64,000 bases of DNA, taken from positions 124,001 through 188,000 of the IMG/VR virus record IMGVR_UViG_3300020202_000001; one strand, given 5' to 3'. A program made the position numbers and the translations under genes. The notes beneath the pieces were generated by a model. The model was not told the DNA's origin. It did not search any database and saw only the letters and a list, made by a program, of their open reading frames with translations. This document shows positions 781-55,921 of the stretch, piece after piece; position 1 is the stretch's first letter, and the number at the start of each line of letters is the position of its first letter.

Positions 781-1320
781 ATGCCCGACCTCCCCGCCAT
801 CGACAGCTGGGTGCGCGTCCAGACGCCCTACCGGGGCATCTGGGAGGGTCGCGTCACGCGGCACGCACGCGCGCCCGGCTGTTTCTTCTTCATGCCGAAG
901 CGGATCAACAACCAAGACCTACCGGCGGGGCACTACGAGAGCCTGAACGAAGCCAGGGCCTTCGCCGTCGACATCGTCGAGGAGAAGGACCTCCCGTGGC
1001 TCCAGCCGGCCCCGCCGCCGGAGGAGGACGAGCCGGTCCCGCCGATCGAGGTGCCGGAGCCGGCGAGGCTGTGGAACGCCCAGAGCCACACGAAGAGCAC
1101 GCCCAGCCCGAAGCGGAAGGTCGTGCCCCGGCACCCGGTCGTCGTGGACGCCGGCGAGGACCCGCCCAAGCCAGTCGAGGCGGTGATCCCGCCGGAACTC
1201 AAGGCTGAAGAGCCGCCGCCGGCACCGCAGAAGCGGGCGAGGCGTCGGATCGACGACCTGCACGAAGGCCCAACCGATGGCCAAGACGAAACAGGGCCAC
1301 AAGGCCCGTCCAATCCGTAA
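781..1320 (+). CDS. hypothetical protein (beta-rich N-terminus, Pro/Glu-rich tail)
   Basis: Genome-typical codon frame, GGAG RBS, follows sigma gene. Confidence 0.7.
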   Translation: MPDLPAIDSWVRVQTPYRGIWEGRVTRHARAPGCFFFMPKRINNQDLPAGHYESLNEARAFAVDIVEEKDLPWLQPAPPPEEDEPVPPIEVPEPARLWNAQSHTKSTPSPKRKVVPRHPVVVDAGEDPPKPVEAVIPPELKAEEPPPAPQKRARRRIDDLHEGPTDGQDETGPQGPSNP

Positions 1321-3079
1321 ACCCAGCAAGCCCCTCCCGATCCCCAAGGTCAACGCGCTGCGTCAGGCCCTGGCGACGCCGGCGTGGGGCAAGTACCGCA
1401 ACGTGACGTTCCGCGACGTGGTCAAGGTCGACCTGGCGTGGATTCACTGGCTGTACCGCCAGAAGCGGACGCTCGGCGAGATCCGCGACCCGAGCTTCCT
1501 GACGCTCGCGCTGATCTGCAAGCACTACCCGCTCGGCGTCGACGACGAGGCGGAGCGGGAGCTGGCCAAGGGCAAGCTGCTGGCCGAGGAGCCGGGCGAC
1601 GAGTCCCGCGACGAGGACGACGTCGACGAGGGCAGCCTGCCCGGCGAGAACGGCGACGACGACGAGGAGGATGACGACGACTTCGACGAGTCCGAGGACG
1701 ACGACGAAGACGACGACGACGAGGACGACGTGCCGATCACGACGGCCGCCTCGCCGGGCCGCCGCCCGCCCCCGCCGCACGACCCGGTCGCCGAAGCGAT
1801 GCAGGCGAAGATCGCCCTGGTGCAGGGCTGCTTCATGTACGGCGTCGACTCCGACCTCCGCGACGAGCTGGACGTGCTGCGGGAGTTCACCAAGCTCCGG
1901 CTCGTGTTCCTCCGGCCCGGCAACGACCCGCCCGGCGTGGTGCGGGGGACGAAGACGCGGGTGGCCGTGCTCGACATGCCCGGGTACCTGTGCTTCCTGC
2001 CCGACGACATCCGCAGCTTCCTCAAGAGCAAGAAGCGCGGGCTGATGCTCCCGTACCCGTACCCGGTGCAGGCGCTGCGGCGGTATTCCGAGACGGTCAA
2101 GCCGCTGCCCGTCGACGCCCACGTCGTGAAGTGGCCGAGCGTCGAGGACCTGGCGATCGCCGCCCGGGCCTCCGACGAGTCGCTCGACATCCTGGAGACG
2201 CAGCGCGGGGCGTGGCAGGACGGGTACACGGACAGCGACGTGACCGCCATGCTCCGCATCCTGTCCAAGCACTACCCCGACCTCCCGCTCGGGATGGTGT
2301 GGGGCGAGCGGCGGAACGGGATGTGCATGGGCGAGAGCGAGTTGTTCTGCATCGAACCGGACGGCACGCTGAGCCACGCGCCCGACTCGATCTTCGAGTT
2401 CCTCCACCACGCCCCGCAGACCAACGACGCCGTGCTGCCCACCCGGGAGGAGGTCAAGAACTTCTTGGCCGCCCGCCGCGTGACGCAGCACGGCCGGGCG
2501 AAGCCGATCTACGTCGGCGACTACAACTACGTCTGGGTCGACAACGACGCCAGGCAGGAAGAGATCGACCATGGCCAAGGTCCACGCGTGCCCGAAGTGT
2601 GGGTTCCCGTCGCAGCCCTCGCTGGACGTGAGGATGCCGGAGAACCAGGGCAAGACGTACTGCAAACACTGCCTGCAGGTCCCGCCGCCGTCGAAGGCGA
2701 CGCCGATCGACCTGAGCCAGTACACCCTGCAGCCGACGACGTCGAAGTGCGGCCACTGCAGGAGCCCGGTGTTCCTGCTGTGTGCCCGCGAGACGGCACC
2801 GCTGTCGGCGGGGGAGATGCCGATGTTCTACCTGTGCCCGACGTGCGGGAAGATCGTGCGGTCGGGGCAGGTGGAGCCGGTGAGCCCGCCGGAGGTGAAC
2901 CGGTCGCCGGTGGCGGCGGCAGCGGCGACGGTGGAGGACCTGGTGCCGACGACGTCCTCGACTACGACGAGGCGAGGGACGGCGAGAAGTGGGAAGGGTT
3001 CCGCCGGTTCGAGGGCGGCCACGTCCTCGACTCCCGTGGCTACGACCAAGACGGAACCCGCAAGCAATACTGGGACTGA
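1277..3079 (+). CDS. hypothetical protein with N-terminal WGKY..WIHWL (DUF3820/exonuclease X C-terminal-like) motif and acidic tract
   Basis: PAWGKYRNVTFRDVVKVDLAWIHWL resembles the FGKY-G..Y..WL motif; Asp/Glu tract; last 509 nt overlap the next gene. Confidence 0.65.
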   Translation: MAKTKQGHKARPIRKPSKPLPIPKVNALRQALATPAWGKYRNVTFRDVVKVDLAWIHWLYRQKRTLGEIRDPSFLTLALICKHYPLGVDDEAERELAKGKLLAEEPGDESRDEDDVDEGSLPGENGDDDEEDDDDFDESEDDDEDDDDEDDVPITTAASPGRRPPPPHDPVAEAMQAKIALVQGCFMYGVDSDLRDELDVLREFTKLRLVFLRPGNDPPGVVRGTKTRVAVLDMPGYLCFLPDDIRSFLKSKKRGLMLPYPYPVQALRRYSETVKPLPVDAHVVKWPSVEDLAIAARASDESLDILETQRGAWQDGYTDSDVTAMLRILSKHYPDLPLGMVWGERRNGMCMGESELFCIEPDGTLSHAPDSIFEFLHHAPQTNDAVLPTREEVKNFLAARRVTQHGRAKPIYVGDYNYVWVDNDARQEEIDHGQGPRVPEVWVPVAALAGREDAGEPGQDVLQTLPAGPAAVEGDADRPEPVHPAADDVEVRPLQEPGVPAVCPRDGTAVGGGDADVLPVPDVREDRAVGAGGAGEPAGGEPVAGGGGSGDGGGPGADDVLDYDEARDGEKWEGFRRFEGGHVLDSRGYDQDGTRKQYWD

Positions 3080-3281
3080 CCAGTGGTACCAGGTCTCGAT
3101 GACTGCCACCGCGTACGTGCAGGGCAAGGTGGTCGTCGCCGCCAAGGACTCGGCCCAGGCCGAGGAGAAGGCGAAGGCCGAGCCGGGCAACGTCGAGTGG
3201 AAGTACGACGGCCTGCACGACGACGCCGCCCCCAGCGTCGACGACGTCCGCCTCGTCTCCGAGGTCCTGAGTCGACAGTAG
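2571..3281 (+). CDS. zinc-ribbon protein (four CxxC pairs)
   Basis: CPKC, CKHC, CGHC, CPTC; RBS AGGA/GAG before ATG 2571. Confidence 0.7.
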   Translation: MAKVHACPKCGFPSQPSLDVRMPENQGKTYCKHCLQVPPPSKATPIDLSQYTLQPTTSKCGHCRSPVFLLCARETAPLSAGEMPMFYLCPTCGKIVRSGQVEPVSPPEVNRSPVAAAAATVEDLVPTTSSTTTRRGTARSGKGSAGSRAATSSTPVATTKTEPASNTGTDQWYQVSMTATAYVQGKVVVAAKDSAQAEEKAKAEPGNVEWKYDGLHDDAAPSVDDVRLVSEVLSRQ

Positions 3282-3383: not shown

Positions 3384-5039
3384 ATGGCCCGCAAGTCCGC
3401 TTCGAGCGTCGCTGTCTCCGCCACCACCACGACCGCCCTGCCGCGCGGCACCAAGCCCGCCCTCGCCAGCCGCACCGAGGCCGACGAGCAGTACGACGTG
3501 TTCGAGAACAAGGTCCGCATGGCGGTCGGCAAGCTGACCGGCCCGCTGTTCACCACGGACATCGACCCCGACGTCCTGTGGAACCTGTACCTCGACAACC
3601 TGCCCTCGAACCGCCAGCACTACGTCTGCAACGGGTGCCGCCGGTTCATCCAGCGGTACACCGGGCTCGTCTCGATCGACGAGGCCGGCAACCCGACGCC
3701 CGCCATCTGGGGCCAGATCTCCGCGCCGAAGTTCTTCGCCGAGGCCGTCGACGCGATGTACTGCGCGGTCGGCAAGGCGAAGGTCAACGGCGTGTTCCTC
3801 CCGACCGAGGCCGTCTGGGGCCAGCCGAAGGACGGGCAGTGGACCCACCTGTCCGGCCGCTACACCGGCGAGCTGGCCGTGCAGAAGGGGCTGACGACCC
3901 CGGACCAGCAGATGGCCCAGCTGAAGGAGGACTTCGGCATGATCCAGCGGGCGCTGGCGAACTACTCGGCCGACATCGCCGGCCAGGCGCTGCGGTTCCT
4001 GAAGTCCGACACGCTCGCCCGGTCCGAGAAGGCCCTCGGCGTCGCCCAGTGGTTCGTCGACCTCCACGCCAACGTGGCCGGGGCGACGAAGCGGAACCGC
4101 GACAACGTGATCTGGCTGGCGGCCGCCACGGCCCCGGTCGGGTTCGCCCACGTCAACGCCGGGCTGATCTCCACGCTGCTCGACGATCTGCTGGCGGGCC
4201 TCCCGCACGCGGACATCAAGCGGAAGTGGGCCGAGAAGGTCGACGGGATCAACTACATGCGGCCGAAGGCGGCCCCGAAGGCCGGCACGATCGCCCGGGC
4301 CGAGGCGCTGGTCGAGGAGATGGGCCTCAAGCGGTCGCTCGACCGCCGGTTCGCCACGCTCGACGACGTCCTGAAGAAGGACTGGGAGCCGCGGACGATC
4401 AAGCCCCGCAAGCCGGCCCCGACCGGCGGCGTGTTCGGTCACCTGCAGCCGCCCTCGGCCTCGAAGGCGGTGCACAACCGCGACATCAGCGGCGGGACGA
4501 TGACCTGGGCGAAGTTCGAGCGGACGGTGCTGCCCGAGGCGCTGTCGATCGAGATCTCGTGCCCGGCGAGCGGCAACTACTTCGGCACGACGACCGCCAC
4601 CTACCGCACGGCCCCGCCCCTGCTGCAGTGGGACGGGCTGGACGGCCAGGAGCGGAACCCGGTGTCGATGTACGTCTACCACGGCGGCTCGACGGCCCGG
4701 CAGTGGGGCCTGTCGCCGGGGTGGAACAAGGTGACGGCGATCTTCCGCGGCCCGCAGGCGTGGCAGCGGCCGGACCTGTTCAAGAACCAGGGCACCGGCA
4801 TCCACTTCTCGATCGAGGGCTGCCGCGACTCCCGGAACGCCGGGCTCGCGATCTTCCCCGAGACGCTGCGGTCGGAGCTGCACGAGGTGCGGGCCGTGAT
4901 CGAGGCCCACAGCAAGAGCGGCACGCTCAAGCACCCGGAGAAGGGGACCGCGAACGGCCTGGCGTTCTCGGCCAACACCCAGCTGCGAGTCACCACGGCT
5001 GACGGCCGGGCGACGTACGTGATCGACCGCATGGACTAG
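3384..5039 (+). CDS. conserved phage protein of unknown function
   Basis: Strong RBS AAGGAGG before ATG 3384; LYLDNLP..RQHYVCNGCRRFI..GLVSID motif recognisable from many phage hypothetical proteins. Confidence 0.8.
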   Translation: MARKSASSVAVSATTTTALPRGTKPALASRTEADEQYDVFENKVRMAVGKLTGPLFTTDIDPDVLWNLYLDNLPSNRQHYVCNGCRRFIQRYTGLVSIDEAGNPTPAIWGQISAPKFFAEAVDAMYCAVGKAKVNGVFLPTEAVWGQPKDGQWTHLSGRYTGELAVQKGLTTPDQQMAQLKEDFGMIQRALANYSADIAGQALRFLKSDTLARSEKALGVAQWFVDLHANVAGATKRNRDNVIWLAAATAPVGFAHVNAGLISTLLDDLLAGLPHADIKRKWAEKVDGINYMRPKAAPKAGTIARAEALVEEMGLKRSLDRRFATLDDVLKKDWEPRTIKPRKPAPTGGVFGHLQPPSASKAVHNRDISGGTMTWAKFERTVLPEALSIEISCPASGNYFGTTTATYRTAPPLLQWDGLDGQERNPVSMYVYHGGSTARQWGLSPGWNKVTAIFRGPQAWQRPDLFKNQGTGIHFSIEGCRDSRNAGLAIFPETLRSELHEVRAVIEAHSKSGTLKHPEKGTANGLAFSANTQLRVTTADGRATYVIDRMD

Positions 5040-25748: not shown

Positions 25749-27278
25749 ATGAAGCAACACGTCCGAATCACGCAGGCCACGCAAGAGGGGACGATCCAGA
25801 CCGCCGAGGGCGTCCTCGACTTCGCCTCGGGCCAGGTCGCCCTCGACTTCGAGATGGCGGTCAACGCGGGGATGACCTACCGCATCCACCTGAACGACGA
25901 GAAGCCCGCCAAGACCGGCAAGGAGGACCACCTCCGGGCCGCCGTCGAGAACGCCGCCGCGATCAGCGACTACTTCCACTGCCAGAAGGAGCGGTTCCAG
26001 CGGTTCTACGACGAGCACGCCGACGCGCTCTCCGGGTTCCCCGGGATCTGGAAGCTGTGCGGCGACGCCGGCATCGCGCTGGCGATCGCCGAGCGGAAGC
26101 TCAAGATCGAGTGGGGCGAGGACGCCGAGTGGATCGACACGGTCCAGGCGTTCTCGCACCGCGTCATGTACCCGCAGCACGTCGAGGGGCTGCCCGCCCA
26201 CGAGTACCAAGGCGGCAACCACGACGACAAGTTCCTCCTCGCCCTGGCGGTGCGGACGATCGAGGACGCGAAGGCCGGGAAGCTCGACGGGTACTGGGAC
26301 ACCGACGAGGCGAACAAGTCGGGCGACGTCGCCGCCGACCACCCCGAGGAGCTGGACTCGGCCGAGCGGGCCGACCAGCAGCGACAGGTCGAAAAGTTCA
26401 CCCCGGCCGTGAAGCCCGGCCCGGACGACCCGTGCCCGGGCTGCTCGTACTGCGAGGGCTTGGGCGGGGACAAGCACGCGACCGGGCAGGCGGCCGCCCG
26501 GTGCCCCCGCTGTGGCGGCAAGGCCACGCCGGTCGACGTCGGCGCGGCGGTCGTGTTCAACGCCCGCCGACTCGTCCTGCTGATCCTCCGGCGGGCCGAC
26601 GTGCCGAGCACGTACGCGGGGCAGTGGGTGCTGCCGGGCGGCAAGGCGGACACGCTCGAATCCGTCAGCGACGCCGCCGTACGCGAGCTGAAGGAGGAGA
26701 CGGGCGTCGTCGCGTACGCGACCGGGCGGCTGGAGCGTACGACGCTCACGCCGGACGGCCGCCACCGCCGGCACTGGATTACCTGCCACCTCGACCCCGA
26801 CAGCCCGCAGGCGGAGAACAAGGAGCCGGAGAAGCACGAGCGTGTGTACTGGTTCAACCCGACCGCCCTGCCGGAGAACATGTCGGAGGACGACCGGCAG
26901 GCGATCCTCTACCTGACCGGGCCGATTACCCCCGGCCACCCGTACGCCGTCATCAACGCCGAGCCGGTGACGGCCAAGGCGCTCGTCATCACCCTGTTGG
27001 CGACCGTCTCCCTCGACGCGACCGAGGAGGAGCTGGCGAAGCTCACCCCGGACGAGCGGTGGGAGGCGGCGAACTGGGCGATGGCGAGCAGCCTGAGCGC
27101 GAGCGACAACGACGACGTCGTGGTGCCGCCCAAGCCGGCGTGCCTCGACAAGATCAAGGAGTGCCCCCAGCCGTGGGATCAACCAACACCGAGCAGCTCC
27201 GCAGCGCCTCCCGCATCAACACCGGACGGGTCACCAAGCCCGCCACCGTCGACGTCCCCGGACCCGTCGAACAGCTGA
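25749..27278 (+). CDS. multidomain protein with zinc ribbon and Nudix hydrolase domain
   Basis: Nudix box GQWVLPGGKADTLESVSDAAVRELKEETG; NKEPEKH..VYWF; CPGC..CPRC. Confidence 0.85.
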   Translation: MKQHVRITQATQEGTIQTAEGVLDFASGQVALDFEMAVNAGMTYRIHLNDEKPAKTGKEDHLRAAVENAAAISDYFHCQKERFQRFYDEHADALSGFPGIWKLCGDAGIALAIAERKLKIEWGEDAEWIDTVQAFSHRVMYPQHVEGLPAHEYQGGNHDDKFLLALAVRTIEDAKAGKLDGYWDTDEANKSGDVAADHPEELDSAERADQQRQVEKFTPAVKPGPDDPCPGCSYCEGLGGDKHATGQAAARCPRCGGKATPVDVGAAVVFNARRLVLLILRRADVPSTYAGQWVLPGGKADTLESVSDAAVRELKEETGVVAYATGRLERTTLTPDGRHRRHWITCHLDPDSPQAENKEPEKHERVYWFNPTALPENMSEDDRQAILYLTGPITPGHPYAVINAEPVTAKALVITLLATVSLDATEEELAKLTPDERWEAANWAMASSLSASDNDDVVVPPKPACLDKIKECPQPWDQPTPSSSAAPPASTPDGSPSPPPSTSPDPSNS

Positions 27279-27544
27279 CGCAGGAGCAGATGATCGTGCT
27301 GATCTCGCCCGGCAGCCCCTCGCCGGGCGAGATCGACTCGGACGCGTCGTTCGACGCGTTCGAGCGGCTGGGCGGCCCGTTCGGCGGCCGCATCCGGTTC
27401 GTCCGGGACAAGGCCGGTGACATCTGGGCCTGCGAGGTCCCCACGCGGCCGAAGACGCAGATGGAGCTGGAGGCGGACGTCGCCCTGGCCACGATGACGA
27501 TCATGGCCGGGACGAGGAAGCCCCATGGCCGACGCAACCCGTAA
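27173..27544 (+). CDS. hypothetical protein overlapping the Nudix gene 3' end
   Basis: GTG 27173 after AAGGAG (alternative ATG 27290 after AGGAG). Confidence 0.55.
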   Translation: MGSTNTEQLRSASRINTGRVTKPATVDVPGPVEQLTQEQMIVLISPGSPSPGEIDSDASFDAFERLGGPFGGRIRFVRDKAGDIWACEVPTRPKTQMELEADVALATMTIMAGTRKPHGRRNP

Positions 27545-27688
27545 GCGGTGCCCGCACGACGGCGGCACCTGTCACCACAACTGCAAGCGGACGTGCTACC
27601 GGCAACGGGGTCAAATGCGGCTGACGCAGCCGCACCCCGGTTTCCGATCCACGGCCGCACATCCCCCGTAGGAAGGACCCTGAAGCCA

Positions 27689-28306
27689 ATGGCTAAGAAG
27701 ATCAAGATCGAGAAGACGAGCAACAAGAAGAGCACCGTGCACGGCGTGCAGGTCACGATCGGCGGCATCCTGTTCGTGCCCGCCGGCAAGAAGACCTGGC
27801 CCACCCGCACGCACCGCGACCGCGCCGTCGAGAAGGTCGTGCAGGCGGTCATCGGGGCCAAGCCGCTCGACCTCGTGACGAAGGACCTGAACCCGCCGGC
27901 CCCGCTCAAGCCGCTCGGCAAGAGCAAGCCGGCGGCGAAGAAGGCCGCCGCCCCGGCCCCGAAGGCGGTCGGCACGAAGAGCGGCCGCGTCTCGGCGGCG
28001 AAGCCGAACAAGGCCAACAAGCCGAAGCGGTTGACGAAGGCCCAGGTCGCCGCGAACCCGGACCAGCCCTCGATCGACGCGGCCAACTCCGTCGACATCG
28101 ACGCGCTCGACACGGACGACGAGGCGGTGCCCAGCCCGGCCACCGACGCGGCGGCCGACGCCGCCGACGCGGCTGCCGCCGACGACGACACGCCGGACGG
28201 TGCCGCGCAGGCGATCGCCGAGGAGCAGGGCGAGCCCGAGGGCGAGCCGCTCGACGACCTCTCCGGCCCGAACGACGACGCCTCGAAGATGCCCGACGAG
28301 GCGTAG
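27689..28306 (+). CDS. Lys/Ala-rich protein with acidic tail (possible nucleoid-associated protein)
   Basis: AAGGA RBS; KPAAKKAAAPAPK then Asp/Ala-rich C-terminus. Confidence 0.7.
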   Translation: MAKKIKIEKTSNKKSTVHGVQVTIGGILFVPAGKKTWPTRTHRDRAVEKVVQAVIGAKPLDLVTKDLNPPAPLKPLGKSKPAAKKAAAPAPKAVGTKSGRVSAAKPNKANKPKRLTKAQVAANPDQPSIDAANSVDIDALDTDDEAVPSPATDAAADAADAAAADDDTPDGAAQAIAEEQGEPEGEPLDDLSGPNDDASKMPDEA

Positions 28307-28310
28307 GCCG

Positions 28311-28340
28311 TTGACGCGGTCCCCCGTCCGGGGGTAGTCT
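28311..28340 (+). promoter_or_regulatory. sigma70-like promoter
   Basis: TTGACG-18 nt-TAGTCT. Confidence 0.5.
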
Positions 28341-28383
28341 TCCACAACTCATACACCGGCCGAGCCGGGAAAAGGACGATGCA

Positions 28384-28659
28384 GTGGCAACCAAGTTCAA
28401 GGTCGAGATGCACACGACGCGGGCGAAGCAACCCTTCAACGCGCGCGTGATGAAGGGCGGCAAGGAGATCTGGCGGACGAGCGAGGGCTACGAGAAGCGT
28501 GGCCCCCGCGACAAGGCCGCGAAGGAGCTGGTCGACGCGATCAACTCCGGCAGCCTGGCGACCGCCAAGCTCGTCGACCTCAACCCGCCGGAGCTGGGCA
28601 AGGCCCCGGCCGCCGGCAAGGCGACGACGAAGACGAAGGCCGCCGCCGCCTCGGCCTGA
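28384..28659 (+). CDS. YegP/DUF1508-like protein
   Basis: FNARVMKGGKEIWRTSEGYEKR..RDKA signature; AAAGGA RBS. Confidence 0.65.
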   Translation: MATKFKVEMHTTRAKQPFNARVMKGGKEIWRTSEGYEKRGPRDKAAKELVDAINSGSLATAKLVDLNPPELGKAPAAGKATTKTKAAAASA

Positions 28660-28705
28660 CCCAACGGCTGCCGCCGCTTTCCCCGGCCCAGCCCCGCGAC
28701 TCGAT

Positions 28706-28746
28706 ACGCCCGGCCGGGACCCGTACCCGGCCGGGCGTGTCATTTT
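28706..28746 (+). terminator. intrinsic terminator
   Basis: ACGCCCGGCCGGG-ACCCGTA-CCCGGCCGGGCGT followed by GTCATTTT. Confidence 0.65.
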
Positions 28747-28750
28747 CACC

Positions 28751-29119
28751 ATGGCAAAGAAACCCCCGCGAAGGGTCACGTTCTGGGGCCGCAAGAAGGA
28801 CCCCGACGAGGACTTCAACAAGCCGCCGCCGAGCAAGGCGGACGCGCTCAAGCAGTGTGCCCGGATCAAGAAGAAGATCCAGGACGCCCCCAAGAAGGTG
28901 TGGGACAAGGCGTTCAAGTTCTTCGAGGACATCGACCAGAAGGCCAGCGAGATCGCCGACTCGATCAAGTCGAACGGCAGCGTCAGCGAGGGGCAGAAGA
29001 AGGCCCTCGACGGCTGGGAACGCGGCGTCGACAAGTGGATCGCCAACAACAAGCCGGCCGAGCCCGCAGAGGGCGACGAGGACGGCGAGGACGACGACGA
29101 AGAAGGCGACGAAGAGTAA
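28751..29119 (+). CDS. hypothetical protein
   Basis: Typical codons; TAATG coupling to next gene. Confidence 0.7.
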   Translation: MAKKPPRRVTFWGRKKDPDEDFNKPPPSKADALKQCARIKKKIQDAPKKVWDKAFKFFEDIDQKASEIADSIKSNGSVSEGQKKALDGWERGVDKWIANNKPAEPAEGDEDGEDDDEEGDEE

Positions 29120-29682
29120 TGCCCGAGCAAGACGGAACAACCTCTCCCCCGTACCCCAGCCAGGTCACCACCAGCCCCGGGCTGTACCGGTACCTCGAAC
29201 TCCTCCGCGCGTGGGTGGTCGAGCAGCAGCAGGAGCTGGTGCCGCTCGTGCCCCGCAAGCACCGCCACAAGATCGACGACGAGCCGGGCTCCTTCCCGCC
29301 CCTGAGCGTGTGGGAGAACGTCAGCGTCGTCGACAAGTATTGGGTGCTGATGTACATCCGCAAGATCCGCGAGGGGTGGGACTACACCCTTCGGGAACAC
29401 GAGGACAGCTGGGACTCCAAGCTGGCCCTCCGCAAGCGGTTCAGCCTCCTGTTCTCCGCCATGCACATCCTCAAGGAGGCGTTCGTCGCCCCCGAGGTCC
29501 GTGAGATGCGGAACCAGCAGGCGGCCGACCAGCACAACGCGCAGATGCAGACCCTGGAGAAGCACCTCCGGGAGGTCCTGGTGCCGCCCGAGATGCGGCA
29601 GGACGCTGCGAAGGCCGAGGGCAGCGACGAGGGCGACCTCACCGACTGGTTCACGGCCGACGACACCGAAGACGAAAGTTGA
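29119..29682 (+). CDS. hypothetical protein
   Basis: TAATG coupling. Confidence 0.7.
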   Translation: MPEQDGTTSPPYPSQVTTSPGLYRYLELLRAWVVEQQQELVPLVPRKHRHKIDDEPGSFPPLSVWENVSVVDKYWVLMYIRKIREGWDYTLREHEDSWDSKLALRKRFSLLFSAMHILKEAFVAPEVREMRNQQAADQHNAQMQTLEKHLREVLVPPEMRQDAAKAEGSDEGDLTDWFTADDTEDES

Positions 29683-30920
29683 CCCCCATGCTCTTGATCG
29701 CAGTCACCATCGCGAAGCCCGTCGTCGACGACGCGGCCCTCCGCAACCAGTACGCGGCGAACCCGCAGATCCTCCAGCTCGCGCTGGCGAAGATGGCCCG
29801 CAAGGTCGTCGAGCACGTCCGCGAGAAGGACCAGTCGTGGATTCCGGGCGAGGTCGTCCTCGTCGCGGAGCCGGACTCGGACCGGCCGGTCGTCGTGCTC
29901 CAGCGGTCGCTGGACGTGGCGGGCAGCCTGCGGAGCCTCCCCAACACGATCATCGCGGCCACCAACCAGGTCGAGGCCCTCGGGGCGCTCCTGCACGCCT
30001 ACGAGACCGAGGAGGGGCTGCCGGTCGACCGGGCCGCCCTCCCGCTCGACGAGCGGCTCAACGCGCTGGTCGAGCACTACATCGAGCTGCTCCCCTCGGA
30101 CGTGCCGGCCGTCCAGCAGCACCGGCAGACCGAGCCCGAGCCCGAGGAGCCCCGCGACGACCTCGCGGCGGTCGACTCCGACATCCTCGCCCGGGAGCTG
30201 CGGCTGACGCGGCAGCACCTGGTCGACCTGTACGGCGTCGTCACCACGATCGTCGAGGAGGGCACCTACAACCTCTCGGACGACCAGAGCAAGGTGATCG
30301 AGATGTCGCAGGAGCACCTGATGGGCTCCGCGGCGAACGACCCGCTGTTCGTGCTCGCCGACCAGGCCGAGGCGGCGTGGAAGGCGGGCGAGGTCGAGGG
30401 GGCGATGAACGTCGGCTTCCCCGAGGCCCTGGAGAAGCTGCTCGCCGAGGTCCGCAAGGGCCGCCCCCGGCCGGAGGAGGGCCAGATCCTCATCCCGGTC
30501 TCGCGTCGGTCGTACGAGCGGCTGAAGTTCGCGGCCGGGGCCACCGGCATCGCGAAGAGCGTCGAGGCCCTACTCGACACGACGACCCAGCGGAAGACGG
30601 TCCCGACGTACCACGCGGACGGCCGCGGGCACGCCGAGCCGCTGGTGCCGGTCCAGGTATCGGTGGGGCAGGGTGTGACCGTCACGCTCGGCGAGAACGA
30701 CGACGTCGGCCCGCCGGACGTGTACGTCGAACGCCACCCCGAGATGTGGCAGGTGAACCTCACGCCGGACGGGTCCGACGTCCGGCTGGTCGCCAAGGTC
30801 CACGACAACGGCAAGCTCGTCGTCACCGACGCGCACGGCACCACACTCCTCGACGAGGACCCGGTGCCCGAGTCCCCGGAACCCGAACGCAATGAGCGAA
30901 GCGAATCCCCCGAAGCGTAA
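29679..30920 (+). CDS. hypothetical protein
   Basis: Typical codons; start 29679 or 29688. Confidence 0.7.
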   Translation: MTPMLLIAVTIAKPVVDDAALRNQYAANPQILQLALAKMARKVVEHVREKDQSWIPGEVVLVAEPDSDRPVVVLQRSLDVAGSLRSLPNTIIAATNQVEALGALLHAYETEEGLPVDRAALPLDERLNALVEHYIELLPSDVPAVQQHRQTEPEPEEPRDDLAAVDSDILARELRLTRQHLVDLYGVVTTIVEEGTYNLSDDQSKVIEMSQEHLMGSAANDPLFVLADQAEAAWKAGEVEGAMNVGFPEALEKLLAEVRKGRPRPEEGQILIPVSRRSYERLKFAAGATGIAKSVEALLDTTTQRKTVPTYHADGRGHAEPLVPVQVSVGQGVTVTLGENDDVGPPDVYVERHPEMWQVNLTPDGSDVRLVAKVHDNGKLVVTDAHGTTLLDEDPVPESPEPERNERSESPEA

Positions 30921-31401
30921 GCAACACGAGACCCCCTGCGCGGCCTGCCCGTTCTCCAAGACGTGCAAGCCGTACGCCGACGACCGGGCGGCGCTGGGCA
31001 ACAGCAGCCCGTTCGTCTACGTCGGCCAGGCCAACGGCAGCTTCACCCTGCCGTGCCACTCGACCCACGACTACACCCAGCTGGAGGAGCGGCTCGCGGC
31101 CGCCCAGCCGGGCAGCGGGTGCGAGTGCGCCGGCGCGGCGATCTTCCGGGCCAACATCGGCCTGCGGTACGCCGAGCGGCTGCTCCACCTGCCGGCCAAC
31201 CTCGGACCCGACTCGCCGGTGTTCGGCTCGTTCACCGAGTTCGTCGCCCACCACTACAAGATCCCGATCGACACGGCGAACATGATCGTCCACGATCTGC
31301 CGCCGGACCTGTTGACCGCGATCGAGGTGAGCAAGGTGCAGTTCAAGGCCCGGGTGCAGCCCGGGTCGGTCATCATCGCGGGTCAGCCGAAAGGCGGGTA
31401 G
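30892..31401 (+). CDS. Cys/His-rich protein (DUF6283-like)
   Basis: PCAACPF, LPCHS, ECAGA motifs. Confidence 0.6.
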   Translation: MSEANPPKRKQHETPCAACPFSKTCKPYADDRAALGNSSPFVYVGQANGSFTLPCHSTHDYTQLEERLAAAQPGSGCECAGAAIFRANIGLRYAERLLHLPANLGPDSPVFGSFTEFVAHHYKIPIDTANMIVHDLPPDLLTAIEVSKVQFKARVQPGSVIIAGQPKGG

Positions 31402-31409
31402 ACTGGAGA

Positions 31410-31429
31410 TGCAAAAACCAGTTTTGAGA
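31410..31429 (+). repeat. dispersed 20-bp quasi-palindrome, copy 5 (TGCAAAAACCAGTTTTGAGA)
   Basis: Two differences from copy 1. Confidence 0.9.
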
Positions 31430-31450
31430 TCTACCGGACAAGGAGGTCCA

Positions 31451-32434
31451 GTGGTCCCCGACCTGCATCGCTACGACTGGGTGATCGTGAACTCTAGCGC
31501 CGGAAAGGATTCTCAGGCGTCCCTCTCGAAAGTCATCAAGACGGCCAAGGCCCAGAACTACCCGCTCGACCGCATCGTCGTCGCCCACGCGGACCTGGGC
31601 GAGATGGAGTGGCCGGGCACGCTGGACTTGGCCAAGGAGCACGCGGCCCACTACGGGCTGCGGTTCGAGGTCGAGCGTCGCCCGCAGGGGGATCTGCTGC
31701 AGCAGGTTGAGGAGCGGGGCATGTGGCCCGACTCCAAGAACCGGTTCTGCACCTCCGACCACAAGCGGGGGCAGATCGCCCGCTTGTTCACCAAACTGAC
31801 CAAGGAGACCCGTGACGCGCTGGCAACTGCTGGCTCTGGGGTTCGGGATCAACCTCGCCCTGTTCGTGATCGCGTACGTGCTGATCGGCACCCACGCCAC
31901 GTCGGATTCGACGAGGCGGACGTGGATTGGGGCGGTCATCGCGGTCGAGGCGGCCGTGTACTTCGCGTTCGTCCGGCACGTCCTGCGAAGCGGTCGCTGA
32001 AGAAGGTACGCTTCCTGAGCGTGTTCGGCTTCCGCTCCGAGGAGAGCCCGGCCCGGAAGAAGATGGTCGAGTTCGAGATCGACGAGCGGCTGACGAACAC
32101 GCTCAGGCACGTCGACCGGTGGCTGCCCGTGCACCACTGGTCGACCCGGGACGTGTGGCACGAGATCCACCAGTCGGGCATGCGGTCGCACTGGGCCTAC
32201 CAGCGCGGCATGAGCCGGCTGTCCTGCCGGTTCTGCATCTTCGCCCCCAAGTCGCAGCTGATGATCTCCGCGCAGCAGCCGGAGAATCGAGAGGTGTTCG
32301 AGAGGTACGTGCAGCTTGAGATCAAAATCGGTCACCGCTTCAAGGCCAAGGAGTCCCTCCAAGACATCAAGGCGGCGGTCGAAGCCGGCGAGCAAGTCGC
32401 CCCCGGCTCCGACGACGGCTGCTGGAACATGTAA
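31451..32434 (+). CDS. PAPS reductase/CysH-like (PP-loop) protein with a ~63-aa internal insertion
   Basis: NSSAGKDS PP-loop, HADLG.MEW, RFCTSDHKR, GFRSEESPAR, WLPVHHWS, AY..GMSRLSCRFC; AGGAGG RBS before GTG 31451. Confidence 0.88.
   Translation: MVPDLHRYDWVIVNSSAGKDSQASLSKVIKTAKAQNYPLDRIVVAHADLGEMEWPGTLDLAKEHAAHYGLRFEVERRPQGDLLQQVEERGMWPDSKNRFCTSDHKRGQIARLFTKLTKETRDALATAGSGVRDQPRPVRDRVRADRHPRHVGFDEADVDWGGHRGRGGRVLRVRPARPAKRSLKKVRFLSVFGFRSEESPARKKMVEFEIDERLTNTLRHVDRWLPVHHWSTRDVWHEIHQSGMRSHWAYQRGMSRLSCRFCIFAPKSQLMISAQQPENREVFERYVQLEIKIGHRFKAKESLQDIKAAVEAGEQVAPGSDDGCWNM
31812..32000 (+). CDS. small two-TM membrane protein fully nested (+1 frame) in the PAPS-reductase gene
   Basis: AAGGAG RBS 4 nt before GTG; genome-typical codons in this frame; two TM helices and basic tail; host frame is Arg/Gly-rich over exactly this span. 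Confidence 0.7.
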   Translation: MTRWQLLALGFGINLALFVIAYVLIGTHATSDSTRRTWIGAVIAVEAAVYFAFVRHVLRSGR

Positions 32435-33296
32435 CAACCCGTTCCTCGACGCCTTCATCGAGCAGGAGGTCGAGCGGTTCGGCCCGAAGCCGATCCCGAA
32501 GGTCGTCAAGGACAAGGAGAAGATCGTCTACAAGAAGGGAGGCGTCGAGGTCGGGTGGCGGTTCCTGCAGGGCCACAACGACGACTACCTCTCGGTCAAC
32601 TGGCGGGCCGAGGGCAAGGACCCGAGCTGTCCGAACATGGCGGCGCTGTGGGTGCCGTTCCTGCGGATCGACGGCCGGCTCTGGATGAGCTACGCCCCGG
32701 CCGAGATCCAGAGCCAGTGGGTCCCGATCCAGATGGCCCGCGGGCACGTCGCCGTGGGCGGCCTGGGGATGGGCTACGTCGCGATGGCGATGGCGGCCCG
32801 GCCCGAGGTCGAGAAGGTCGTCGTGTTCGAGCGGGACGACCGGGTCCTGCGCATGTTCAACGACCTGAACCCGGACCCGTTCCCCGGGTCGACGAAGATC
32901 AAGGTCGTCATGGGCGACCTGTACGAGGAGCTGCCCAAGTACGAGCCGCCCGGCGGCGAGTGGGACCTCGTGTACATGGACCCGTACCTGAAGCGGGCGA
33001 GCGTCGAGGCGGTCCGGGACACGATCACGCTCTGGCTCGGCCGGAAGGTCAAGACCAAGGCGTACCGGTTCTGGGCGCAGGAGGAGATCACCCGCTACCT
33101 CGTGCGGTCCATGGGCGTACGCCCGCCGCGCGAGATGTTCTCCGTCCACGACGCCCGCTTCTTCCGCCTCTTCGACAGCACGGTCCAGCTCCGGGAGCAC
33201 AACAACTTCCAGAACGATCTGCTGGCCAAGGTGGCGGCGATGGCCTTCGCCCGAGACGCGAAGGCCCGCCGCGCGATCGACAAGGTCACCGAGTGA
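32316..33296 (+). CDS. class I SAM-dependent methyltransferase / spermidine-synthase-like protein
   Basis: ARGHVAVGGLGMGY, VEKVVVFERD, IKVVMGD, WDLVYMD motifs; start uncertain. Confidence 0.75.
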   Translation: MRSKSVTASRPRSPSKTSRRRSKPASKSPPAPTTAAGTCNNPFLDAFIEQEVERFGPKPIPKVVKDKEKIVYKKGGVEVGWRFLQGHNDDYLSVNWRAEGKDPSCPNMAALWVPFLRIDGRLWMSYAPAEIQSQWVPIQMARGHVAVGGLGMGYVAMAMAARPEVEKVVVFERDDRVLRMFNDLNPDPFPGSTKIKVVMGDLYEELPKYEPPGGEWDLVYMDPYLKRASVEAVRDTITLWLGRKVKTKAYRFWAQEEITRYLVRSMGVRPPREMFSVHDARFFRLFDSTVQLREHNNFQNDLLAKVAAMAFARDAKARRAIDKVTE

Positions 33297-33297
33297 C

Positions 33298-33744
33298 ATG
33301 GCCAAGCGACGCAAGCGAAAGCAGAGGAACCGCGTCGTCGGTGCCCGCCCCGCCGGCCCGGACCACCAGGTGGTCACGATCACGGGCCAAGGCGAGGCGG
33401 GGTATTGCACCCGGCCGTGCCCGCAGTGCCCGTGGCGGAAGGACCAGGCCGGGAGCTTCCCGGCCGAGGCCTTCCGCCACTCGGCGAACACGGCGTACGA
33501 CATGGACCAGCACACGTTCGCCTGTCACATGGCGGGCGTCGAGAACCCGAAGATCTGTGCCGGCTTCCTCCTCAACGGCGCTGCACACAACATGACGATC
33601 CGCCTGGCCGTGATCCGGGACGAGATCGACTTGGACAAGGTCACGGACGGCGGGCACGAGCTGCACGAGAGCTACCGCGCCATGGCCGAGGCGAACGGGG
33701 TGCCGCCGGACGACCCGGCGCTCGCCCCCTGCAGGGAACCATGA
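33298..33744 (+). CDS. DUF6283-like Cys/His protein
   Basis: PCPQCPWRKD..G.FPAEAF, FACH, ICAGFL, LHESYRAMA.ANGV. Confidence 0.7.
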   Translation: MAKRRKRKQRNRVVGARPAGPDHQVVTITGQGEAGYCTRPCPQCPWRKDQAGSFPAEAFRHSANTAYDMDQHTFACHMAGVENPKICAGFLLNGAAHNMTIRLAVIRDEIDLDKVTDGGHELHESYRAMAEANGVPPDDPALAPCREP

Positions 33745-34244
33745 AGAAGGTCCTGTTCATCCTCCAGAACGCCTGGAGCCCGATGTACGCCGGCGGCACC
33801 TGGCCCCGGGACTCGTGGCTGCGGGCGTTGCACCGGTCGAGGAGCGGCCAACGTCTGCGGACGATCACCAAAGCCGTCGACGCCACCGGTGCGTTCGAGT
33901 TCGACTACGACAACACGACCCCGCAGGTGACGGCCAAGCCGTGCGGGGTCTCGCCGATCGACTACGTGCACGTCGAGGGCGTGCTGGCCCGGCTGGTCGG
34001 GTACGACGTGGAGCGGTCCGTCGTCGTCCTCTGCGGCGACCAGGCGGCCAAGGTCCTCGACCGGTTCCTGATCCCCCAGCCGACGCTCCTGATCCCGCAC
34101 CCGGCCTACCGGGTCGTGACCAACCTGCTGCTCGAACAGGCCGCCGATCTCATCCGTAATGGGTTCCAGGGGCAGGTGAGGCTGAAGCAGGATCGCGGGC
34201 GCGTAGTCCAATCCTGTTGCAAGTCAAGCCCCGAGCGGGCATGA
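33741..34244 (+). CDS. uracil-DNA glycosylase-like fold protein
   Basis: VLFILQN, SRSGQRL, VVVLCGDQA, IPHPAYR follow the UDG superfamily motif order. Confidence 0.55.
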   Translation: MKKVLFILQNAWSPMYAGGTWPRDSWLRALHRSRSGQRLRTITKAVDATGAFEFDYDNTTPQVTAKPCGVSPIDYVHVEGVLARLVGYDVERSVVVLCGDQAAKVLDRFLIPQPTLLIPHPAYRVVTNLLLEQAADLIRNGFQGQVRLKQDRGRVVQSCCKSSPERA

Positions 34245-55247: not shown

Positions 55248-55895
55248 ATGAGCGACGACGCACCACGCAAGAACTGGTTCAGCGAGCGGATGAAGGGGCA
55301 GAACGCCCAAGGCCGCCTGGACCACGAGCTGTTGCAGTTCGAGGCCGAGCGGCTGAAGTGGCTGCTCCAGCGATTCGGGCTGAAGAAACGGATGCACCAG
55401 GTGATCCGCCGCTACCACGCGGACACCGGCCGTTCGGAGCTTCGGTTCGAGGCGTTCAACGAAGTGTTCCCCACCTTCCCCTTCCTGATCGGGTGCACGA
55501 AGCTCCAGGGCGTACCGATGCCCGGCCGCGTGTCCAAGAGCGGGCAGCAGAAGGTGACGCCGGTCGACTACCACATCTACCTCGACCCGGCCTCGACCGA
55601 GCCGGCGCGGTTCAAGAACTTCACGAAGGTCCCGTTCGTCGGGGCCTACAAGGACTTCTACGCCGCGTCGGCCGGTCGGGCCAACGGTCGGAAGGTGGCA
55701 CTGATCTTCCCGCGCAAGGGGTTCCTGCACGGGATGGTCATGCACAACGACTCCTCCGAGCAGTTCTGGACGGAGGGACTGTCGTGGGTGTACAAGGTGC
55801 CCGGGACGGAGAACCGCCTGTACGTCCAGCCCCTGTCGGCCCTCGTGGAGGCGATCTACGAGGGAGGCAGGGGGTGGCGTCCGCCCGGGGAGTAG
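55248..55895 (+). CDS. hypothetical protein
   Basis: Typical codons. Confidence 0.7.
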   Translation: MSDDAPRKNWFSERMKGQNAQGRLDHELLQFEAERLKWLLQRFGLKKRMHQVIRRYHADTGRSELRFEAFNEVFPTFPFLIGCTKLQGVPMPGRVSKSGQQKVTPVDYHIYLDPASTEPARFKNFTKVPFVGAYKDFYAASAGRANGRKVALIFPRKGFLHGMVMHNDSSEQFWTEGLSWVYKVPGTENRLYVQPLSALVEAIYEGGRGWRPPGE

Positions 55896-55896
55896 A

Positions 55897-55916
55897 TCTC
55901 AAAACCGGTTTTTAGA
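55897..55916 (-). repeat. dispersed 20-bp site, copy 9 (TCTCAAAACCGGTTTTTAGA)
   Basis: Exact reverse complement of copy 8; 5 nt upstream of a -35 box. Confidence 0.95.
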
Positions 55917-55921
55917 TCCCC

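What the first reader, a model, noticed from the sequence alone, without database searches (positions are those of the whole stretch)
31801..32003. A complete membrane-protein gene nested start-to-stop inside the PAPS-reductase gene
Seen: between RLFTKLTKET and KVRFLSVFGFRSEES the enzyme carries about 63 extra Arg/Gly-rich residues. Exactly this span (31812-32000, 189 nt, a multiple of 3) is a GTG-to-TGA ORF in the +1 frame with native codon bias, two TM helices and a basic tail. Its RBS (AAGGAG) is supplied by the host Lys-Glu codons. Deleting 31812-32000 restores an in-frame compact junction (ETQKVRFL). Established: this loop is normally short in CysH-like proteins. Inference: either a gene landed precisely in a tolerant loop and both proteins are made, or the insert is skipped by splicing or ribosomal bypass. 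The topology is holin-like or immunity-protein-like.
Basis: partly seen in the sequence, partly recalled or inferred. Interest (0 to 1): 0.8.

Follow-up and report, generated by a model that had tools for sequence, protein, structure and literature searches.

The report
Small gene nested inside enzyme gene
A complete 62-codon gene for a two-helix membrane protein sits in a shifted reading frame inside a surface loop of a giant phage's PAPS-reductase-like enzyme gene, whose own frame stays open through it. Three related phages carry different small genes at the same spot, so this loop may act as a slot for extra genes.

Summary
The host gene (GTG 31451 to 32434, Pfam PAPS_reduct) carries 63 extra codons at 31811-32002 that compact homologues lack. 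The same bases form a GTG-to-TGA ORF in the +1 frame (31812-32000, 62 aa). An AAGGAG spelled by the enzyme's Lys-Glu codons lies 4 nt upstream.

Inside the insert the codon signature switches frame. GC3 is 0.50 in the enzyme frame and 0.89 in the +1 frame. The codon-usage score is -1.1 against +0.43 bits per codon.

AlphaFold folds the 62-aa product as a confident helical hairpin (pLDDT 94). The enzyme-frame reading of the same bases is a disordered loop (pLDDT about 40) between two well-folded halves.

Three relatives (L001, L002, L004) carry unrelated +1-frame ORFs at the same site, each with the enzyme frame open. L002 holds two tandem genes.

No RNA family, unusual fold, terminal repeats, intein residues or bypass signals were found, so splicing or hopping is unsupported. 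None of the nested proteins has a detectable homologue, and no expression data exist.

Best reading: small cargo genes sit in a permissive loop and the enzyme is read through them. This is a new variant of nested or out-of-frame-remodelled genes. The holin or immunity role is untested.

The parts
31440..31446 (+). Ribosome-binding site AAGGAGG of the enzyme gene, 4 nt before GTG 31451
   Evidence: Read directly from the sequence. The ATG at 31409 lies inside a repeated intergenic motif, so GTG 31451 is the more likely start.
31451..32434 (+). PAPS-reductase-like enzyme gene (PP-loop ATPase fold), 327 aa, frame open across the insert
   Evidence: PF01507, 54 bits against a cutoff of 22.5. 1894 homologues found. 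AlphaFold pLDDT 85. Foldseek matches APS/PAPS reductases 2goy, 6vpu and 1sur at E about 1e-6 to 1e-5.
31802..31807 (+). AAGGAG: Lys-Glu codons of the enzyme that also serve as the Shine-Dalgarno sequence of the nested ORF
   Evidence: L001 and L004 also have AAGGAG as the enzyme's Lys-Glu codons ahead of their +1-frame start; L002 has AAGGAG 6 nt before its GTG, but in a different phase of the enzyme frame.
31812..32000 (+). Nested ORF in the +1 frame, GTG to TGA, 62 aa, two-helix membrane hairpin with a short basic tail
   Evidence: ORF listing. GC3 of 0.89 and codon score +0.43. Hydropathy profile. AlphaFold single-sequence pLDDT 94.1 with helices 3-28 and 32-59.
31811..32002 (+). The same DNA read in the enzyme frame: a loop of about 63 Arg/Gly/Asp/Pro-rich residues, absent from compact homologues
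   Evidence: Alignment A1. GC3 of 0.50 and codon score -1.11. pLDDT 37-48, coil between helix 101-127 and strand 186-191.

Best explanation
A small, complete protein-coding gene sits inside a permissive surface loop of a jumbo phage's PAPS-reductase-like enzyme gene.

Shown:
- The 189 bases carry the genome's coding signature in the +1 frame, not the enzyme frame.
- They form an exact start-to-stop ORF behind a Shine-Dalgarno sequence.
- They encode a helical membrane hairpin.
- The enzyme frame stays open.

Inferred:
- One mRNA yields two proteins. Ribosomes that start at GTG 31451 read straight through and make a full-length enzyme with a 63-residue disordered linker. Ribosomes that start internally at GTG 31812, using the Lys-Glu codons AAGGAG as their binding site, make the 62-aa membrane protein.
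- The segment was a gene first and the enzyme reads through it second. This is overprinting in reverse, or out-of-frame remodelling.
- Only this relative phase puts the cargo's GC-rich third positions at the enzyme's first codon positions, where stop codons cannot easily form. Selection for an intact enzyme therefore keeps only insertions in this phase.
- In this clade of phages the loop behaves as a cargo slot. Four related enzymes hold four unrelated cargoes at the same junction. They arose either by repeated insertion or by cassette exchange through recombination between the conserved enzyme halves.
- The role of the membrane protein is unknown. It is probably an accessory, moron-like function at the host membrane, such as exclusion, immunity or lysis timing.
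For: - Frame switch of GC3 and codon score inside the insert.
- SD, start and stop sit exactly at the insert's edges.
- The +1 product folds confidently (pLDDT 94). The enzyme-frame product of the same bases is disordered.
- Compact homologues lack the segment.
- L001, L002 and L004 carry different +1-frame ORFs at the same junction, with the same GC3 switch. L002 holds two tandem ORFs joined by a canonical GGAGAGGAGTTAGATG junction.
- In-frame loop expansions in other homologues keep GC3 in frame 0, which serves as a control.
- The inserts share no DNA or protein similarity, while the flanks of window and L001 are 71-72% identical.
- Codon shuffles give the chance of an open enzyme frame as 0.72, 0.09, 1.0 and 0.10 for the four inserts. 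With the 1-in-3 phase requirement, that is about 1e-4 jointly if the events were independent and unselected.
- Both enzyme halves show dN/dS of about 0.2-0.45 among insert carriers.
- L002's insert has no frame-0 restart codon, so its C-half can be made only by read-through.
- The four carriers group in one clade with compact P0006.
Against: - There is no expression evidence. No RNA run was listed.
- None of the nested proteins has a homologue. The 62-aa protein was searched by words, by HMMER against 1.84 billion representatives, and by tblastn against phages. The L004 ORF was searched by words and by tblastn against phages.
- So no donor gene is known, and selection on the nested frames cannot be measured.
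- The only two SNPs inside an insert (the L002 family) are synonymous in the enzyme frame and non-synonymous in the nested frame. With n=2 the chance is 1 in 9.
- L001's nested ORF has a weak coding signal.
- In L001 and L004 the +1 ORF lacks a stop at the insert's end and runs about 30 codons into the enzyme's C-half.
- Protein searches could not return split enzymes because of the length filter. Only the tblastn-based locus searches could, and they found none in this clade.
- High AlphaFold confidence for a hydrophobic hairpin is not proof of a real protein.
Confidence: 0.6

Rival explanations
1. Silent passenger. A piece of foreign coding DNA was captured in the loop by illegitimate recombination. 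The enzyme reads it out of frame as a harmless linker, and the +1 ORF is a relic that is not, or no longer, translated.
For: No homologue exists for any nested ORF. Two of two SNPs in the L002 insert change the nested protein but not the enzyme. L001's +1 signal is weak, and the L001 and L004 ORFs lack their own stop at the insert's end. Out-of-frame remodelling with short disordered alternative-frame parts has been described in E. coli (PMC8788219).
Against: In the window, SD, start and stop lie exactly at the insert's edges. L002 has two ORFs with a canonical gene junction. GC3 and hydrophobic helices are intact. A random fragment would rarely be a whole gene.
Confidence: 0.2
2. De novo overprinting. 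The loop first expanded as part of the enzyme, and the +1 ORF arose later within it.
For: The loop is expansion-prone in the family. The nested proteins are orphans.
Against: In the insert, the enzyme frame has non-coding-like codon usage and the +1 frame has genome-typical usage. This is the opposite of what is expected for a young overprinted frame. Four unrelated sequences occupy the same site.
Confidence: 0.07
3. Programmed +1 frameshift near the AAGGAG fuses the enzyme's N-half to the membrane hairpin. This would give a membrane-anchored PP-loop fragment instead of, or besides, a separate small protein.
For: An SD-like element lies just upstream of a frame change, which recalls the prfB arrangement (own knowledge). 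The +1 frame is open from 31799.
Against: There is no slippery or hungry codon, and no stop at the site. The site sequence differs among the four lineages. A normal start codon is present in each.
Confidence: 0.04
4. The enzyme is dead or split. The insertion inactivated it, or its halves are made separately ('genes in pieces').
For: The insertion lies inside the fold between a helix and a strand. The window has one frame-0 GTG with GAGG upstream, at 31922.
Against: Frame 0 is open in all four lineages. The family's invariant motifs are all kept. Both halves show dN/dS well below 1. L002 has no restart codon, and L001 has none with an SD.
Confidence: 0.04
5. The insert is removed, by RNA splicing, ribosomal bypass or protein splicing, so the mature enzyme is compact.
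For: Its length is a multiple of three, and deleting it restores a compact junction.
Against: No Rfam family matched. Folding energy is ordinary, z +0.78. At 189 nt it is far longer than known hops and too short for group I or II introns (own knowledge). It has no matched take-off and landing codons and no intein end residues. The segment has codon periodicity, which introns lack.
Confidence: 0.02

Closest known systems
Embedded +1-frame genes of phages: lambda Rz1 inside Rz, and phiX174 lysis gene E inside D (own knowledge; spanin architectures reviewed in PMC6139136)
   Same: A small membrane-acting protein is encoded entirely within another gene, in the +1 frame. It is translated from an internal start on the same mRNA.
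   Different: Those genes overlap host sequence that is itself conserved and functional, and they arose by overprinting. Here the overlapped host segment is absent from most homologues, has non-coding-like codon usage and is disordered. The nested frame looks like the older one.
Out-of-frame remodelled genes ('ORgenes', Watson, Lopez and Bapteste 2021, PMC8788219)
   Same: Part of a protein is the alternative-frame reading of another ORF. The authors proposed in theory that a full-sized gene could integrate out of frame.
   Different: Here the alternative-frame part is internal (ORF-ALT-ORF). The donor ORF is still complete and sits in place with its own SD. The same site holds different donors in related genomes. 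No donor family was found elsewhere.
Homing-endonuclease insertions that split phage genes ('genes in pieces': mobE in nrdA of Aeh1, mobA in T4 gene 60, seg in gene 43; PMC2988022)
   Same: A free-standing gene lies inside an enzyme gene of a phage, and the enzyme keeps working.
   Different: Those cargoes are endonucleases, and they split the host gene into two polypeptides. Here the cargo is a small membrane or other orphan protein, and the host frame is not interrupted.
Rickettsia palindromic elements and similar selfish DNA inserted in frame in coding genes (own knowledge)
   Same: Extra DNA is tolerated in surface loops of proteins, with the reading frame kept.
   Different: Those elements are repeated, palindromic and non-coding in their own right. 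This insert is unique, has no terminal repeats and carries its own ORF.
Phage morons (own knowledge)
   Same: Small accessory genes, often membrane proteins, are added to a phage genome without homologues in relatives.
   Different: Morons lie between genes and have their own promoter and terminator. This one lies inside a gene and borrows the host gene's codons as its ribosome-binding site.

Membership tests
PAPS reductase-like PP-loop enzymes (Pfam PF01507), host gene | Pfam model above the gathering score | tested here: met
   54 bits against a cutoff of 22.5, E 2.6e-14.
PAPS reductase-like PP-loop enzymes (Pfam PF01507), host gene | PP-loop SxGxDS motif and alpha/beta ATP-pyrophosphatase fold | tested here: met
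   SSAGKDS lies in invariant columns of A1. Foldseek matches 2goy, 6vpu and 1sur at probability 1.00.
Assimilatory PAPS/APS reductase (CysH) proper | C-terminal catalytic ECGLH-type cysteine motif and a sulfate-assimilation role | tested here: not met
   The C-terminus is ...DDGCWNM, and identity to solved CysH structures is only 10-17%. The motif itself is recalled from own knowledge. The gene is a phage family of unknown substrate.
Class II holins, nested protein | Two transmembrane helices and a charged C-terminal tail | tested here: met
   Hydropathy and the AlphaFold hairpin agree. The tail is RHVLRSGR.
Class II holins, nested protein | Sequence membership in a holin family | tested here: not met
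   Best hit is phrog_5871 at E 0.061. No Pfam hit. BFVD fold matches are all E > 0.3 and to unnamed proteins.
Class II holins, nested protein | Location beside an endolysin gene | tested here: not met
   Neighbours from 27154 to 34241 give no lysis family. The rest of the window was not scanned.
Class II holins, nested protein | Hole formation or lysis timing | not testable with these tools
   Needs expression in a host.
Overprinted nested genes (Rz1 in Rz, E in D) | Complete embedding in an alternative frame of a host gene | tested here: met
   31812-32000 lies inside 31451-32434, in the +1 frame.
Overprinted nested genes (Rz1 in Rz, E in D) | The overlapped host segment is ancestral: conserved in homologues and with genome-typical codon usage | tested here: not met
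   The segment is absent from compact homologues. The enzyme frame scores -1.11 and the nested frame +0.43.
Genes-in-pieces by homing-endonuclease insertion | The cargo is a homing endonuclease and the host gene is split into two ORFs | tested here: not met
   No nuclease domain was found. The host frame is uninterrupted.
Self-splicing intron, intein, or translational bypass | Intron RNA structure; or intein end residues in frame; or matched take-off and landing codons with a stop and a hairpin | tested here: not met
   No Rfam match. Fold z-score +0.78. The junction codons ACC CGT ... CTG AAG show none of these features.
Out-of-frame remodelled genes (ORgenes) | An internal part of the protein equals the alternative frame of another ORF | tested here: met
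   The enzyme loop is the +2 frame of a complete ORF, counted from that ORF's start codon.
Out-of-frame remodelled genes (ORgenes) | A donor gene family is identifiable elsewhere | tested here: not met
   No homologue of the nested ORFs in any search.
Transposable or miniature mobile element | Terminal inverted repeats, target-site duplication, or multiple copies | tested here: not met
   No flanking repeats. No second copy in the window or in the loci fetched up to (L001-L164).

The most novel reading that the evidence does not exclude
The loop of this enzyme is a heritable intragenic cargo slot. A fixed Shine-Dalgarno sequence, written in the enzyme's own Lys-Glu codons, drives whichever small gene lies behind it. 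Cargo is swapped between phages by recombination in the two conserved enzyme halves. Selection keeps only cargoes in the one phase that leaves the enzyme readable. One mRNA stretch then yields both a working enzyme with a junk linker and an unrelated accessory protein.
Probability: 0.35. Interest if true: 0.8.

Novelty: new variant of a known kind. Interest (0 to 1): 0.7.

Why it matters
Phage genomes are thought to gain accessory genes at gene boundaries, because insertions inside genes are lethal. Overlapping genes are thought to arise when a new frame is born inside an old gene.

This locus suggests a third route. A whole gene lodges in a permissive loop, and the old gene reads through it in the one stop-poor phase.

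If both products are made, three things follow:
- Gene callers systematically miss such cargo. None of the four nested ORFs examined was a called gene or returned by a protein search here.
- Odd Arg/Gly-rich 'linkers' in high-GC proteins may mark hidden genes.
- Enzyme loops can act as exchange points for phage accessory functions.

The idea is directly testable with one cloned fragment and a single synonymous point mutation.

Tried and rejected
- Near-identical DNA in GenBank phages: none.
- Homologues of the 62-aa protein: none by word-indexed search, by HMMER against 1.84 billion representatives, or by tblastn against phages. The language-model atlas gave only unnamed clusters of similar-sized (about 60-65 aa) proteins at score 0.85, below the level that counts.
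- Homologues of the L004 nested ORF: none.
- L002 nested ORFs: no significant Pfam or PHROG family after the coordinate correction. No database-wide homologue search was repeated for them.
- Coordinate error of my own: (proteins 2 and 3) and 48 used L002 coordinates one base off, so they read the enzyme frame. They are void. The 'PAPS reductase' PHROG hit came from that error. The searches were redone with L002:4410-4616 and 4620-4841.
- Terminal repeats or a target duplication around the insert: none.
- RNA family or unusual RNA structure: none.
- RNA-seq runs: none listed. The DNA runs gave only contigs identical to the window.
- Similarity among the four inserts at DNA or protein level: none beyond the overlap with the conserved enzyme C-half.
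- More carriers: none in IMG/VR, JGI metagenomes or GTDB genomes beyond the four lineages.
- Compensated frameshift of an old in-frame insert: rejected, because the +1 frame ends in a stop at the junction.
- Antisense coding: rejected. The minus-strand frame that shares GC3 has the wrong position-1 and position-2 pattern and scores about 0.

Full report
**What is there**

The window comes from a 224,418-bp viral contig from a soil metagenome (IMGVR_UViG_3300020202_000001). At 31409-32434 (+) there is an open frame whose product matches Pfam PAPS_reduct (54 bits, cutoff 22.5).

The likely start is GTG 31451, 4 nt behind AAGGAGG. The ATG at 31409 lies inside a 27-nt motif that recurs elsewhere in the genome.

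Inside this gene, 31812-32000 is a GTG-to-TGA ORF of 62 codons in the +1 frame. The AAGGAG 4 nt upstream of it is the enzyme's own Lys-Glu codon pair. Removing exactly these 189 bases leaves ...KETQKVRFL... in frame.

**Is it more than chance?**

GC by codon position is .64/.40/.92 before the insert and .59/.40/.93 after it. Inside the insert it is .89/.61/.50 in the enzyme frame and .62/.49/.89 in the +1 frame.

I trained a codon-usage log-odds score on 38 long genes of the window. For 62-codon windows of true genes it averages +0.77 (sd 0.27). Their +1 frames average -1.53 (sd 0.39).

The nested ORF scores +0.43. The enzyme frame across the same bases scores -1.11. Only 0.8% of +1 windows reach 0.32, and only 0.2% of frame-0 windows fall to -1.0.

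The minus-strand frame that shares the GC-rich third position has the wrong first and second position pattern and scores about zero. So in these 189 bases the coding signature belongs to the nested frame on the plus strand, not to the enzyme.

**The two products**

The 62-aa sequence has two hydrophobic stretches. AlphaFold, without an alignment, folds it as a helical hairpin at pLDDT 94.1, with helices 3-28 and 32-59.

The enzyme, folded with 29 homologues, is confident on both sides (mean pLDDT 85). Through the insert (residues about 128-180) it is coil at pLDDT 37-48, between helix 101-127 and strand 186-191.

The fold matches APS/PAPS reductases and other PP-loop enzymes. Identity is only 10-17%, and the CysH C-terminal motif is not present. 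It is therefore a PAPS-reductase-like phage enzyme of unknown substrate.

**Comparison with homologues**

The search returned 1894 relatives. Compact ones of 260-285 aa lack the segment. In 127 fetched loci the stretch from the RYCTSxxKR motif to the GFRxEES motif is usually 28-48 residues, against 95 in the window. GenBank phage homologues align in two pieces around the insert.

The loop is nevertheless a hotspot. Of the best 120 proteins:
- 64 are compact.
- About 44 carry one or two tandem extra copies of the GDLL...RGMWP...RYCTSxxKR module.
- Eight share a conserved in-frame insert of about 30 residues.
- Four carry 'out-of-frame-looking' inserts: the window, P0002, P0004 and P0007.

In-frame expansions keep GC3 in the enzyme frame.

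**The three sibling inserts**

I fetched their DNA. In each, GC3 moves to the +1 frame inside the insert, and a +1-frame start codon follows an AAGGAG. In L001 and L004, as in the window, that AAGGAG is the enzyme's Lys-Glu codon pair; in L002 it lies in another phase of the enzyme frame.

- L002: a GTG ORF of 69 aa with two hydrophobic helices (4410-4616). It is followed at once by a second ORF behind GGAGAGGAG-TTAG-ATG (4620-4841). That ORF has a helix-turn-helix-like stretch and only sub-threshold HTH matches.
- L004: a 97-aa soluble-looking ORF.
- L001: a 69-aa ORF with a weaker signal.

The last two have no stop at the insert's end and run about 30 codons into the enzyme's C-half.

The four inserts share no DNA or protein similarity. 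The flanking enzyme DNA of window and L001 is 71-72% identical.

On a tree built without the loop, the four carriers fall in one clade together with the compact P0006 (SH-aLRT 89). A single origin is neither shown nor excluded.

**Is the enzyme still read through?**

Frame 0 is open across all four inserts. Codon shuffles of each cargo give the chance of this as 0.72, 0.09, 1.0 and 0.10. The other alternative frame is almost never open.

With the 1-in-3 requirement for phase and length, the joint chance without selection is about 1e-4 if the events were independent.

A caveat applies. The protein search could not return split enzymes because of its length filter. The tblastn-based locus searches could, and they found none in this clade.

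Further points:
- Both halves show dN/dS of about 0.2-0.45 among carriers.
- All family-invariant residues are kept.
- L002 has no frame-0 start codon anywhere in its 120-codon insert, and L001 has none with a Shine-Dalgarno sequence. The C-half cannot be made separately there.

The reason the phase is always the same is simple. When the cargo's GC-rich third positions fall on the enzyme's first codon positions, T-initial stop codons are rare.

**Alternatives**

- Splicing or bypass finds no support. There is no Rfam match, the folding energy is ordinary (z +0.78), and there are no matched take-off and landing codons or intein residues. The segment also has codon periodicity.
- No terminal repeats or extra copies point to a transposable element.
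- De novo overprinting is unlikely, because the nested frame, not the enzyme frame, has the genome-typical usage.
- The most serious rival is that the ORF is a silent passenger. None of the nested proteins has a homologue. No RNA data exist. The only two SNPs inside an insert (L002 family) are silent in the enzyme frame and change the nested protein, G40D and Q44R. That is two sites, with a chance of 1 in 9.
- Against the passenger reading stand the exact start-to-stop fit, the Shine-Dalgarno sequences, the tandem gene junction in L002 and the intact helices.

**Comparison with what is known**

The arrangement works like the embedded +1-frame genes of phages (Rz1 in Rz, E in D). It fails their defining feature, because the overlapped host segment is not ancestral.

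It resembles homing-endonuclease 'genes in pieces' (PMC2988022), but the cargo is not a nuclease and the host gene is not split.

It fits the concept of out-of-frame remodelling (PMC8788219), which raised out-of-frame integration of a whole gene as a theoretical case. Here the donor ORF is still complete in place, and different donors occupy one site in related phages.

I found no paper describing this for PAPS-reductase genes or phage enzymes.

**Verdict**

The best explanation is a small cargo gene in a permissive enzyme loop, with both frames translated (confidence 0.6). It is a new variant of a known kind, and its function is untested.

Noticed in passing
window 31408-31434 (+) and 55892-55918 (-): A 27-nt motif, GATGCAAAAACCAGTTTTGAGATCTAC, with inner palindrome AAAACCNGTTTT. 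It lies just upstream of the enzyme's ribosome-binding site and recurs in the window (3 mismatches, 0 expected by chance). Three more copies lie on the 137-kb contig of run X2. It is probably a phage promoter or operator-like element.
   Followed up: partly
window 1277-3079 (+) and 2571-3281 (+): ORF 1277-3079 carries the coding GC3 signal only to about 2540. From 2571 the signal belongs to the next gene, in the +1 frame, yet the first ORF stays open for another 500 nt. This is the same stop-poor relative phase as at the nested gene, here as a long terminal overlap or a missing stop.
   Followed up: partly
homologues P0013, P0016-P0019, P0023, P0028, P0033, P0036 and others; locus L117: Many relatives carry two or three tandem copies of the roughly 40-residue module GDLL...RGMWP...RYCTSxxKR at the same loop. 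P0003 carries a whole second N-terminal half there. The loop is thus a general expansion point of the family.
   Followed up: partly
L002 4620-4841 (+): The second nested ORF in the sibling locus has a helix-turn-helix-like stretch (SFVEIAGVTGKSVSQVRRL). Matches are only sub-threshold: HTH_23 and Sigma70_r4 at E 0.13, phrog_31496 at E 0.019. With the two-helix membrane ORF before it, the pair forms a two-gene cassette inside the enzyme.
   Followed up: partly
window 30892-31401 and 33298-33744 (+): Two Cys-rich proteins of one PHROG (phrog_5443, E 3e-11 and 3e-7) flank the enzyme. A methyltransferase-like ORF lies at 32430-33293. The L001 relative has a DUF6283 gene in the equivalent neighbourhood. 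This may be a conserved module with the PAPS-reductase-like enzyme.
   Followed up: no
L164 2417-2866 (Micromonospora echinofusca contig): Only the C-terminal half of a homologue is present in this bacterial genome, from about residue 113 of P0006. It is a truncated copy and unrelated to the nested-gene clade.
   Followed up: no
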